A stretch of 64,000 nt of DNA, from the NCBI RefSeq assembly GCF_964188315.1, contig NC_135656.1, forward strand, positions 107,322,001 through 107,386,000. Reading direction: 5' to 3'. The DNA is from Podarcis muralis (taxonomy: Eukaryota). This document shows, piece by piece, positions 27,449-29,583 of this stretch. The notes beneath the pieces are model-generated. The model made no database searches and had not been told where the DNA came from. It saw nothing but the letters and a program-made list of their open reading frames with translations. Each line of letters starts with the position of its first letter. Position 1 is the stretch's first letter. Both the position numbers and the translations under genes were made by a program.

Positions 27449-27806
27449 TTTTCTGGATTTTCTGTTGTTCTCCTTACCGGCGACAGTAGAGGAGCGGAAG
27501 ACACGACCAGAAGCAGGGACTCAAGCCACATAGATGGGGTGCACAGTGGAAATGAAAGGGATACAGCTCACAACCAGAGCAGCATCAGCTGTTGCTGGGG
27601 CAACAAAGGGTTGGGACTAGCTAGGAAGCAAAGGAAAATGGAGGGCTGGCATGGTGCTGTTGCCACGGTGATGGAAACACATCTCCCTGATGTACAACAC
27701 CTGGAGGACTTCCTGCTGGTCCTTCTAGAACATGGGTAGGCAAATTAAGGCCAGGCTCGAATTTTCACATTACGGACCAATATAAAGCACAAACTACTAA
27801 TTTCAG

Positions 27807-28381
27807 TTACAGATAGGTAGCCGTGTTGGTCTGCCATAGTCAAAACAAAAAAAATTCCTTCCAGTAGCACCTTAAAGACCAACTAAGTTAGTTCTTGGTA
27901 TGAGCTTTCGTGTGCATGCACACTTCTTCAGATACACTGAAACAGAAGTTGCCAGATCCTTCTATATAGTGAGAAGGTGGGGAGGGGTATTACTCAGAAG
28001 CGTGGTGGGAATGGGTGATTGGCAGATAGCTGTGATGAGCCTGTTGATGACTCTTAACGACTGCAATAGGTCTTACAGGAAAAAGCAAGGGGTGAGAAGG
28101 TGAAAAATGGCTTTGTCATGTATAATGAGATAAGAATCCAATGTCTTTGTTCAGACCAGGTCTCTCCATGGTTTTAAGTTTGGTAATAAGTTGCAATTCA
28201 GCAGCTTCTCTTTCCAGTCTATTTCTGAAATTCCTTTGTAGTAAAACAGCTACTTTGAGATCTTGTATAGAATGTCCTGGGAGATTGAAGTGTTCTCCTA
28301 CTGGTTTCTCTGTCTTGTGATTCTTGATGTCAGATTTATGTCCTGTCTTGTGATTCTTGATGTCAGATTTATGTCCGTTTA
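27807..28381 (-). mobile_element. Penelope-like element 3' fragment (GIY-YIG endonuclease C-terminus)
   Basis: Minus strand reads GHKSDIKNHKTEKPVGEHFNLPGHSIQDLKVAVLLQRNFRNRLEREAAELQLITKL; 12-bp TSD TACTAATTTCAG at 27795-27806 and 28382-28393. Confidence 0.85.
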
Positions 28382-28466
28382 TACTAATTTCAGCACTGCA
28401 TGCAAATACTGTCTTACTGCGTGATTTCCTGATGCATCTGGCAAAAACAAGAAGAAAAAAAATCTG

Positions 28467-28554
28467 TCCTTCGAGCCGGAGTCGAACCAGCGACCTAAGG
28501 ATGACTTTGGCAGCAGTCTACAGTCCTCCGCTCTACCAGCTGAGCTATCGAATG
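28467..28554 (-). tRNA. tRNA-Tyr(GTA) with a 15-nt intron and a C2>A acceptor-stem mismatch; possibly impaired
   Basis: 87/88 identical to 9332-9419, including intron ACTGCTGCCAAAGTC; starts CATTCG instead of CCTTCG (plus-strand T at 28553). Confidence 0.9.
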
Positions 28555-29583
28555 GACAAGCCTAGGGTGCTGTGCCTCACCTTTTAACTGTGGGTGTGGC
28601 ACCTGCTGGATGTGGAACTGGAATTTCAATGGGAGATATTCCCTTTGAATGCCTTCCCCAGGCTTCCTGCCTCTCCACCAGCAAGCCTAAGATCTAAAGC
28701 ATGGGTAGGCAAACTAAGGCCTGGGGGCTGGATCCGGCCCAATCACCTTCTAAATCCGGCCTACGGACAGTCTGAGAATCTGCGTGTTTTTACATGAGTA
28801 GAATGTGTCCTTTTATTTAAAATGCATCTCTAGGTTATTTGTGGGGCATAGGAATTAGTTCTCCCCCGCCCCCCCCCCAAAACAGTCTGGCCCCGCACAA
28901 GGTCTGAGGGACAGTGGACCGGCCCCCTGCTGAAAAAGTTTGCTGACCCCTGTTCTAGAAGGCATGAAAGGCTGGACAAAGGAAGCTGAGCTCGCTCTCA
29001 AGTCTGGGAGTGTCTGGCAGCAGCAACAGGAAGAGGAGGGTGTTGTAAACCTCCAGGGCTGAGGACCTCGAGTCAGCAGTAGGCCCAGGATGTGCCTGGT
29101 GGGGTAGAGCAAGCAGCCTGCACTGCACCCCCTAAGTTAACCTTCTTCCCTCACCACCCTATCCTAAGTGTTGAAGTCAGTTTCACATGCCAGTCTAGTT
29201 GGCTTCAGTGGGACAGCCTCCCTTAGTTGAAAAAGTCGACTTCCTTGGGTGACCTCCCTGGGGCGCAAGCCTGGGTGGTGTGTATGGAGGTCCTGGCCTG
29301 CCCAGGTGACAAGACCACACACACACACACCGGCCCTGCTGATGTGGTCCAAAGGACAGCAGAGCAATACATTTAGCACCATTTGGCTGCAGGAGTTGCC
29401 GAAAGGAGGCATACAAGGCCTTGCCTTAGTGACTACTCTCTTGATTTGTGTGCAGGGTTTACTCCTGAGTCTTTTCTTCTCCCAAATATATCCCGCAAGG
29501 CAGTGGAGGTTTAGGGTCTGAGTTTCCCTTCTCTCAGATGGACTGCCTTCCCAGGTTGATCAGCCCCATCTGCCCCAGGATAT

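What the first reader, a model, noticed from the sequence alone, without database searches (positions are those of the whole stretch)
27723..28960. tRNA gene captured inside a hAT-MITE-bounded unit with a perfect target-site duplication
Seen: TTCTAGAA | CATGGGTAGGCAAATTAAGGCC (22-bp MITE end) | reverse complement of 9193-9546 including tRNA-Tyr | full MITE 28700-28952 | TTCTAGAA. The captured flanks are about 94-95% identical to the 9.3-kb donor by eye, while the two MITE bodies look more diverged. The donor also abuts a MITE end at 9192. Knowledge: 8-bp TSDs are the hAT signature. Inference: the shared MITE end primed ectopic repair or template switching that copied the tRNA gene into a resident MITE. 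The result is a Pack-TIR-like unit with both termini that could be remobilised, a route for tRNA gene amplification.
Basis: partly seen in the sequence, partly recalled or inferred. Interest (0 to 1): 0.87.

Follow-up and report, generated by a model that had tools for sequence, protein, structure and literature searches.

The report
tRNA gene copied into a transposon
A small, old cut-and-paste transposon in this lizard genome picked up a 354-base copy of a nearby tRNA-Tyr gene, most likely during repair of a DNA break; this kind of capture is already documented in animals, and nothing shows that the loaded element ever moved or multiplied.

Summary
An 8-bp duplication TTCTAGAA brackets a 22-bp MITE 5' end, then the reverse complement of 9193-9546 with tRNA-Tyr(GTA), then a full 253-bp MITE.

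One correction: the cargo is split by a 575-bp retroelement (27807-28381) with its own 12-bp target duplication. It looks absent in two sister taxa.

Similarity to the 9.3-kb locus runs straight through the flank/MITE boundary:
- flank: 94% identical
- MITE positions 1-22: 100%
- MITE positions 23-85: 75%, no closer than unrelated family copies

So the two MITE bodies are independent insertions. The cargo entered a resident MITE at position 22/23. One junction is homologous (the shared MITE end) and the other has 1 bp of microhomology. This fits one-ended homologous repair copying outward from a paralogous MITE 18.5 kb away, finished by end joining.

This is the "gap-filling" origin of single-copy Pack-TIRs (Tan et al. 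2021). That survey filtered out parents lying next to a TE.

There is no evidence of remobilisation or tRNA amplification. Depth suggests about 1-4 loci, and the copied tRNA has an A2·G71 acceptor-stem mismatch.

Contigs from three close taxa all carry the left junction. No empty or MITE-only allele was seen.

The scan has already noted other Pack-like hAT elements elsewhere in this genome. Verdict: a new member of a known kind, of modest interest.

The parts
27723..27730 (.). Left copy of the 8-bp target-site duplication TTCTAGAA
   Evidence: (D14): exact 8/8 match with 28953-28960. Chance about 1.5e-5. TA at positions 4-5, as at all five family insertion sites.
27731..27752 (+). 22-bp stub of the MITE 5' end (TIR), with one private mismatch (T at 27745)
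   Evidence: 1 mismatch to the consensus 22-mer, 0 matches expected in shuffles; the last base C (27752) is shared with the parent (9547), giving 1 bp of microhomology at the junction.
27753..27806 (-). Cargo part A: distal 3' flank of the tRNA, equal to rc(9493-9546). Its last 12 bp form the target duplication of the nested insert.
   Evidence: 52/54 identical, mismatches at 27791 and 27799.
27807..28381 (-). Nested 575-bp retroelement fragment, not part of the capture. It belongs to a high-copy family, is 5'-truncated, and carries a private 33-bp tandem duplication at 28310-28375.
   Evidence: (D4): 12-bp target duplication at 27795-27806 and 28382-28393. (D2): the tandem duplication; thousands-fold depth, a constant family end at about 27806, depth falling to the right, and a joint 27795>28383 in organisms B and C; its core 27848-27948 is 100% identical to 11950-12050.
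28382..28699 (-). Cargo part B: proximal 3' flank, tRNA-Tyr and 145 bp of 5' flank, equal to rc(9193-9504)
   Evidence: 294/310 identical plus one 6-bp indel. No mismatch from 28678 up to the MITE boundary.
28467..28554 (-). Captured tRNA-Tyr(GTA) copy with a 15-nt intron at 37/38. C2>A (28553) creates an A2·G71 mismatch.
   Evidence: Rfam tRNA 48.4 bits against 56.8 for the parent. ARAGORN with introns gives Tyr(gta) and shows the a.g mispair in the acceptor stem; the alignment flags the non-standard pair.
28455..28462 (-). T8 run 4 nt downstream of the tRNA copy, a likely Pol III terminator
   Evidence: Read directly from the sequence. That oligo-T terminates Pol III is established knowledge.
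28700..28952 (+). Full-length 253-bp hAT-type MITE. Positions 1-22 (28700-28721) are identical to the parental-side MITE; from position 23 on it is an independent family copy.
   Evidence: 0/22 mismatches, then 15/59 (positions 23-85). Distances are star-like and there are no exclusive shared derived sites.
28953..28960 (.). Right copy of the 8-bp target-site duplication TTCTAGAA
   Evidence: D14, I1.
9193..9546 (+). Parental segment: tRNA-Tyr(GTA) at 9332-9419 with 139 bp upstream and 127 bp downstream. It sits head-to-head with a second tRNA-Tyr at 8026-8113(-).
8956..9192 (-). MITE abutting the parental segment. Its 5' end is at 9192. It has an internal tandem duplication, and its 3' part is missing and followed by a (TA)n run.
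1145..1382 (-). Reference family copy used for the consensus and distances. Further copies lie at 29585-29836(-) and 37081-37337(-).

Best explanation
A roughly 253-bp non-autonomous hAT (Buster-type) MITE inserted long ago at a TTCTAGAA site. Later, a double-strand break occurred inside or at the 5' end of this resident MITE. The two breakpoints coincide at MITE position 22/23.

The 3' end on the MITE side paired with another copy of the same family, 18.5 kb away on the same chromosome and in inverted orientation. That copy lies 139 bp upstream of a tRNA-Tyr gene. The new strand then left the template and was joined to the other broken end, which kept MITE positions 1-22, by end joining with 1 bp of microhomology.

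The product is TSD | MITE 1-22 | cargo | MITE 1-253 | TSD. This is a single-copy Pack-TIR made by transposition-independent gap filling (one-ended synthesis-dependent strand annealing plus NHEJ).

Much later, in this lineage only, a 575-bp retroelement landed in the cargo.

Shown: the anatomy, both junctions, the independence of the two MITE bodies, the order of events and the low copy number.
Inferred: the break, its position, the direction of copying and the repair pathway.
For: 1. The duplication is flush with the outer MITE termini, at a site of the family's nnnTAnnn type.
2. Identity to the 9.3-kb locus is colinear across the flank/MITE boundary, but it changes sharply: 94% in the flank, 22/22 in MITE positions 1-22, then 44/59 in positions 23-85 plus a 4-bp indel. 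Fisher p = 4.6e-5 for all sites and 0.02 without CpG transitions.
3. The two MITE bodies are no closer than random family pairs: 85.2% against a range of 82.6-91.3%. Their distances to the consensus (5.9% + 9.5%) add up to their pairwise distance (14.8%), and they share no exclusive derived site.
4. The left stub ends at the same MITE position, 22. That junction has only 1 bp of microhomology.
5. There is no further homology between the two neighbourhoods.
6. The parent lies in a head-to-head tRNA-Tyr pair and has no MITE piece or duplication on its far side.
7. Contigs from three organisms span the left junction.
8. The features match published single-copy Pack-TIRs: hAT is the commonest superfamily, the parent is in cis, microhomology is 1-36 bp, and there is little or no loss of TE sequence between breakpoints (PMC8277862).
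Against: - No MITE-only or empty allele was observed. All available taxa are too close.
- The sample is small: five MITE copies and 59-122 compared sites.
- Without CpG transitions, the body-versus-flank contrast over positions 23-148 is only p = 0.08.
- A single change-point scan was not decisive on its own: p = 0.05, with the best point inside the flank.
- Contig depth of 2.7-3.8 locus equivalents over 28392-28460 in organisms B and C leaves room for a third paralogue that could be the true template.
- An internal break at 22/23 cannot be told apart from a transposase cut at the MITE end with two-sided synthesis.
Confidence: 0.68

Rival explanations
1. The composite was assembled elsewhere and arrived at TTCTAGAA by transposition as a loaded unit. 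It could have formed at another resident MITE by gap filling or fork switching, or as a macro-transposon. The duplication would then date from that jump.
For: - The unit has both termini and a perfect 8-bp duplication.
- One family copy (1145-1382) is only 2.5% from the consensus, so the family may still have been active at the time of capture, about 3% per lineage.
- Contig depth over the cargo of 2.7-3.8 locus equivalents in B and C allows one or two further loci.
- Other notes of this scan describe multicopy loaded hAT elements in this genome (unchecked).
Against: - The window holds no second composite.
- Raw-read depth over 28392-28460 is about the same as single-copy flanks.
- In the published survey, single-copy elements close to their parent in cis are typical of gap filling, while multicopy ones lie far from their parents.
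Confidence: 0.14
2. The direction is reversed, or both loci derive from a third one. The 9.3-kb tRNA segment would then be the copy, made from the composite or from an unseen paralogue.
For: The shared block (22-bp MITE end plus 354 bp) is bounded by a non-homologous MITE body at both loci, so the similarity pattern alone is symmetric. Depth hints at a further locus.
Against: - The MITE consensus has no tRNA cargo, and the composite's cargo lies inside a duplication-bounded MITE, so it must be a recipient.
- Copying from the composite would have had to stop exactly at the stub boundary by coincidence.
- The 9.3-kb gene is paired with a second tRNA-Tyr that shares a 24-nt upstream motif.
Confidence: 0.08
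3. End bypass or transduction, or a plain segmental duplication: the parental-side MITE and its flank were moved or duplicated together.
For: MITE and flank are colinear at both loci. The published survey discards exactly this configuration as a possible segmental duplication.
Against: - The MITE bodies are not co-derived.
- The parent has no MITE end or pseudo-TIR at 9547.
- Homology stops at the unit's edges, which are flush with a perfect duplication.
Confidence: 0.05
4. Assembly chimera that joins repeats.
Against: Contigs of independent runs from three organisms cross flank, duplication, stub and cargo with 0-3 differences.
Confidence: 0.02

Closest known systems
Single-copy Pack-TIRs of animals made by transposition-independent gap filling (Tan et al. 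2021, Nat Commun 12:4280; PMC8277862)
   Same: - A resident hAT-type TIR element carries a 100-5000 bp duplicate of nearby host DNA between its own pieces.
- The parent lies in cis.
- There is microhomology at a breakpoint.
- Almost no TE sequence is lost between the breakpoints.
- It is single-copy.
   Different: - The parent lies directly against a same-family MITE, a configuration that survey filtered out.
- One junction is therefore a 22-bp or longer homologous junction at a TE terminus.
- The distance of 18.5 kb is just beyond the survey's <15 kb 'proximal' class.
- The cargo is a complete Pol III gene; the word tRNA does not occur in that paper.
- The breakpoint is near the terminus (position 22 of 253) rather than internal.
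P-element-induced gap repair copying non-homologous sequence from ectopic templates, and abortive gap repair or filler DNA in Ac/Ds (own knowledge: Nassif et al. 1994; Rubin & Levy 1997; both cited within PMC8277862 as its gap-filling basis)
   Same: A broken or excised TIR element is repaired from a homologous element elsewhere, preferentially in cis. Sequence attached to the template is copied in, and synthesis aborts and ends by end joining.
   Different: Those are experimental or recent events with an active transposase. Here the event is ancient (about 6% divergence) and transposase involvement is unknown.
Pack-MULE, Pack-CACTA and Pack-TYPE elements of plants
   Same: TIR-bounded non-autonomous elements with captured host DNA and target-site duplications.
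   Different: Different superfamilies. They are often multicopy and carry fragments of protein-coding genes. Here the element is hAT, single-copy and carries a tRNA gene.
Dada DNA transposons (PMC3706591, PMC8869645)
   Same: DNA transposons physically associated with tRNA or snRNA gene sequence.
   Different: By the abstracts seen, Dada elements insert specifically into multicopy small-RNA genes. Here the tRNA gene is passive cargo inside a hAT MITE with an 8-bp duplication at an unrelated site.
Buster-family hAT MITEs such as Mar of Drosophila willistoni (PMC3517528)
   Same: 8-bp duplications with nnnTAnnn. The Mar TIR CAG(G/A)GGTAGGC nearly matches this family's CA(T/G)GGGTAGGC. Both are short, non-coding and multicopy.
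   Different: Different host and internal sequence. No cognate transposase was identified here.

Membership tests
hAT superfamily, non-autonomous MITE (Buster type) | 8-bp target-site duplication | tested here: met
   Composite 8/8. Copy 37081-37337: 7/8. Copy 1145-1382: 5/8. Copy 29585-29836: none recognisable.
hAT superfamily, non-autonomous MITE (Buster type) | Short imperfect terminal inverted repeats | tested here: met
   The 24-nt arms including the duplication are 88% complementary (I1). The 5' CATGGGTAGGCAAACT faces the reverse complement of the 3' end, CAGGGGTCAGCAAACT. The ends resemble the Mar TIR.
hAT superfamily, non-autonomous MITE (Buster type) | Target consensus nnnTAnnn (Buster) rather than nTnnnnAn (Ac) | tested here: met
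   TA at positions 4-5 in five of five 5' flanks. Chance about 3e-7 from the window's TA frequency. The consensus is taken from PMC3517528.
hAT superfamily, non-autonomous MITE (Buster type) | Cognate autonomous element encoding a hAT transposase with the same termini | not tested
   No transposase was searched for, and the tools give no access to the rest of this genome.
Pack-TIR (criteria of Tan et al. 2021) | Non-TE insert of 100-5000 bp flanked by two pieces of one TIR element, each covering at least 10 bp of a consensus terminus | tested here: met
   22-bp 5' stub and full 253-bp element. The interior is 354 bp of cargo, or 947 bp counting the nested insert and one copy of its 12-bp target duplication.
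Pack-TIR (criteria of Tan et al. 2021) | Unambiguous parental copy at 90% identity or more | tested here: met
   93.4% and 96.3% to 9193-9546. Only the window could be searched, so uniqueness across the genome is untested.
Pack-TIR (criteria of Tan et al. 2021) | Insert length 80-120% of the parent | tested here: not met
   947 bp against 354 bp as it stands. The ratio is 100% only after removing the later 575-bp nested retroelement and one copy of its 12-bp target duplication.
Pack-TIR (criteria of Tan et al. 2021) | Parental copy has no TE within 100 bp (a control for segmental duplication) | tested here: not met
   The parent abuts a same-family MITE at 9192. Segmental duplication is instead excluded here by the independent MITE bodies. 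This is a pipeline filter, not a biological property.
Functional tRNA-Tyr gene (the captured copy) | Cloverleaf with GTA anticodon, canonical intron position, downstream T-run | tested here: met
   The T8 run is at 28455-28462.
Functional tRNA-Tyr gene (the captured copy) | Fully paired acceptor stem | tested here: not met
   C2>A gives an A2·G71 mispair. The score drops from 56.8 to 48.4 bits.
Functional tRNA-Tyr gene (the captured copy) | Transcription and aminoacylation | not testable with these tools

The most novel reading that the evidence does not exclude
Copying outward from one MITE into the flank of a dispersed paralogous MITE may be a recurrent route in this lizard genome, and one that surveys systematically filter out. 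It would duplicate whatever lies next to a MITE, including complete Pol III genes. Because the product keeps both termini, some such units would then be mobilised, spreading tRNA genes by cut-and-paste transposition.
Probability: 0.12. Interest if true: 0.6.

Novelty: new member of a known kind. Interest (0 to 1): 0.3.

Why it matters
This natural example is clean enough to read the repair mechanism from its two junctions: one homologous, at a transposon terminus, and one end-joined. It belongs to a class that the only systematic animal survey excluded by design, namely parents lying next to a TE. Such captures may therefore be under-counted.

It also shows that a whole Pol III gene, with upstream region and terminator, can be placed between functional-looking transposon ends. 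As it stands it is one old, single-copy and probably decaying tRNA duplicate, so it has no demonstrated consequence for the tRNA gene repertoire.

Tried and rejected
Only 27300-28460 could be laid. The right junction and the tRNA therefore have no read support, and both read-laying runs are used.
- A single change-point likelihood scan along flank and MITE was not decisive: p = 0.05, with the best point at a mismatch cluster at 28606. I replaced it with region-matched family comparisons.
- I suspected a Penelope-type hammerhead motif on the minus strand of the nested element, about 27898-27935. Rfam gave no hit at E <= 1, so it stays an unverified impression.
- A larger segmental duplication is rejected: outside the unit there are no colinear matches between 22-35 kb and 3-16 kb, only dispersed repeats.
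- End bypass or transduction is rejected: the MITE bodies are not co-derived and the parent has no MITE end at 9547.
- Literature searches for tRNA genes captured by TIR transposons found no direct precedent. They found only Dada elements and general Pack-type papers. The library is limited, so this is not proof of absence.
- The search of earlier findings by sequence was blank.

Full report
**Observation**

TTCTAGAA occurs at 27723-27730 and again at 28953-28960 (D14), with a chance of about 1.5e-5 at fixed positions.

Directly inside the left copy lies a 22-nt match to the MITE 5' end (27731-27752, one mismatch). The window holds six matches to this 22-mer against none in 100 shuffles.

BLAST within the window shows two matches:
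- 27752-27806 = rc(9493-9547) at 96.4%
- 28382-28847 = rc(9049-9504) at 90.8%

The element at 28700-28952 is full length compared with three other copies at 1145-1382, 29585-29836 and 37081-37337.

The tRNA is an intron-containing tRNA-Tyr(GTA). ARAGORN in bacterial mode mis-reads it, but it is clear with introns allowed and in Rfam.

The interior is 947 bp, not 354 bp. A 575-bp insert (27807-28381) splits the cargo and is flanked by a perfect 12-bp duplication TACTAATTTCAG (D4). The parental sequence is continuous across that point.

**The key anatomical result**

Similarity to the 9.3-kb locus does not stop at the cargo/MITE boundary. It runs colinearly into the MITE, with 28699|28700 corresponding to 9193|9192. 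That could mean MITE and flank were duplicated together. Three results say they were not.

1. Identity by segment:

| Segment | Matches | Identity |
|---|---|---|
| non-tRNA flank | 249/265 | 94.0% |
| tRNA | 88/89 | 98.9% |
| MITE positions 1-22 | 22/22 | 100% |
| MITE positions 23-85 | 44/59, plus a 4-bp indel | 74.6% |

Fisher p = 4.6e-5 against the flank, or 0.02 after removing CpG transitions.

2. Over positions 23-148 the two MITEs are 85.2% identical. That is inside the range for unrelated pairs (82.6-91.3%), and the composite's MITE is closest to the copy at 1145-1382.

3. Distances to the family consensus (5.9% and 9.5%) add up to the pairwise distance (14.8%). There is no exclusively shared derived site, so the phylogeny is star-like.

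I also scaled the flank divergence to the region's own family-wide divergence. Co-derived bodies should then differ at about 5-7 of 74 sites in positions 23-100. They differ at 15 (Poisson p = 1e-4 to 8e-3).

The switch from parent-like to independent therefore lies at or just after MITE position 22. This is the same position at which the left stub ends.

**Junctions**

The left junction (stub|cargo, 27752|27753) shares only one base with the parent (C = 9547 on the other strand). The right junction is a homologous one inside the first 22 nt of the MITE. One homologous junction plus one end-joined junction is the signature of one-ended strand invasion, synthesis and end joining.

No other colinear similarity links the two neighbourhoods. 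A larger segmental duplication is therefore excluded within the window.

**Mechanism (inferred)**

1. A resident MITE at TTCTAGAA suffered a break, either at position 22/23 or at its 5' end with 22 nt resynthesised from the sister chromatid.
2. The 3' end on the MITE side paired with the paralogous, inverted MITE 18.5 kb away and primed synthesis out of that MITE's terminus through 354 bp of tRNA-Tyr locus.
3. The nascent strand was released and joined to the other end.

This is the gap-filling model that Tan et al. (PMC8277862) propose for most single-copy animal Pack-TIRs:
- hAT is their commonest superfamily (208 of 370).
- 59.8% of cases are intrachromosomal, with density falling with distance.
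- Microhomology is 1-36 bp.
- The gap between breakpoints is a median 4.6% of the TE.

Their pipeline discarded parents with a TE within 100 bp, and they say they may miss TE-linked parents. This configuration would not have been counted.

The word tRNA does not occur in that paper. My searches found no report of a tRNA gene captured by a TIR element, only Dada elements that target small-RNA genes.

**Family assignment**

- Duplications are 8 bp: perfect here, 7/8 and 5/8 in two other copies, and unrecognisable in one.
- All five 5' flanks have TA at positions 4-5, a chance of about 3e-7.
- This is the Buster-type hAT target nnnTAnnn. The termini resemble the TIR CAG(G/A)GGTAGGC of the Buster-family Mar MITE (PMC3517528).
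- No transposase was examined.

**Order of events**

1. MITE insertions came first: the two MITEs compared here (28700-28952 and the one at 9192) are 5.9% and 9.5% from consensus, the five family copies 2.5-9.5%.
2. The capture followed: cargo against parent is 6.0%, about 3% per lineage.
3. Organisms A, B and C then split. Contigs of B and C match 27368-27794 with 3 differences in 427 nt.
4. The retroelement inserted last.

In B and C a joint 27795>28383 (skips 587, 11 ambiguous bases) lacks the insert. Depth accounting suggests both the parental locus and the composite locus lack it:
- In B, the joint-bearing unitig has about twice the single-locus depth and starts exactly 30 nt before the end of the locus-specific contig.
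- In C, the locus-specific 533-nt contig has 106 nt beyond 27794, and its depth reappears at 28392-28460.

The parental paralogue alone could also give this joint, so I rate this as likely, not shown. It fits the 100% identity of the insert's core to another copy at 11950-12050.

**Direction**

The MITE consensus has no cargo, and the cargo here lies inside a duplication-bounded MITE, so this locus is a recipient. The 9.3-kb gene lies head-to-head with a second tRNA-Tyr that shares a 24-nt upstream motif. Beyond 9546 it continues into DNA without any MITE piece.

A third, unseen paralogue as the true template is not excluded. Contig depth over 28392-28460 is 2.7-3.8 locus equivalents in B and C, while raw reads of D give about one to two.

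**Remobilisation and tRNA amplification**

Nothing supports either.
- There is no second composite in the window.
- Depth over the cargo is low.
- The copied tRNA has C2>A (28553), giving an A2·G71 mispair and a drop of 8.4 bits.

Its anticodon arm, T arm, intron and T8 run are unchanged, so transcription is possible but untested.

**Support outside the assembly**

Contigs from organism A (0 differences over 27311-27781), B and C cross flank, duplication, stub and cargo. The best holder for A may be the assembly's own sample, but B and C are independent.

**Earlier notes of this scan**

Notes for the same genome describe several Pack-like hAT elements with captured DNA, one judged multicopy. 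I did not test them. They suggest the phenomenon is common in this lizard, and this lowers the surprise of the present case.

**Verdict**

The amplification idea is unsupported. This is a new member of a known kind (Pack-TIR by gap filling). Its two modest points of interest are a complete Pol III gene as cargo and a template choice guided by a paralogous MITE terminus.

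Noticed in passing
window 27807-28381, 11950-12050, 32194-32264, 18894-19239: The nested 575-bp insert belongs to a very abundant family: thousands-fold depth at about 1x coverage, a constant end at about 27806, and depth falling rightwards as for 5'-truncated retroelements on the minus strand. Its core of about 100 bp (27848-27948) is 100% identical to a stand-alone 101-bp copy at 11950-12050, which has its own duplication of about 10 bp (ATATTTCTGG). 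This points to very recent activity of a tiny mobile unit. On the minus strand it reads like a minimal hammerhead core (CTGAAGA ... GAAAGC), but Rfam gave no hit.
   Followed up: partly
window 28310-28375: A perfect 33-bp tandem duplication inside the nested retroelement (D2).
   Followed up: no
window 8956-9192 and 8920-8955: The parental-side MITE carries an internal tandem duplication of about 57 bp (8987-9044 against about 9049-9106). It lacks its 3' 90 bp or so, which is replaced by a (TA)n run. The run ends in ATATAAAG, a 7/8 match to the MITE's 5' flank ATCTAAAG and possibly the second copy of its target duplication.
   Followed up: partly
window 8026-8113(-) and 9332-9419(+); motif 8201-8224 / 9261-9284 / 28613-28631: Two tRNA-Tyr(GTA) genes lie head-to-head 1.2 kb apart, with different 15-nt introns. 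They share a 24-nt upstream motif (95.8% identical) that sits at different distances from the two genes. It may be a conserved upstream promoter element of this tRNA family.
   Followed up: no
window 52993-53065(+) and 53351-53974(+): Rfam calls a tRNA at 52993-53065 (51.4 bits) that ARAGORN does not accept; by eye it looks Lys(CTT)-like with a poor acceptor stem. It may be a tRNA-derived SINE head. The ARAGORN 'tmRNA' at 53351-53974 is surely spurious in a vertebrate.
   Followed up: no
window 28428: The composite of organism A has C at this position, whereas its parental locus and both loci of organisms B and C have G. This is a lineage-specific substitution and could serve as a marker for the composite copy.
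   Followed up: no
window 27300-27416: The left flank begins with another very high-copy repeat, with depth of hundreds at 1x and sharp family boundaries at about 27364 and 27397.
   Followed up: no
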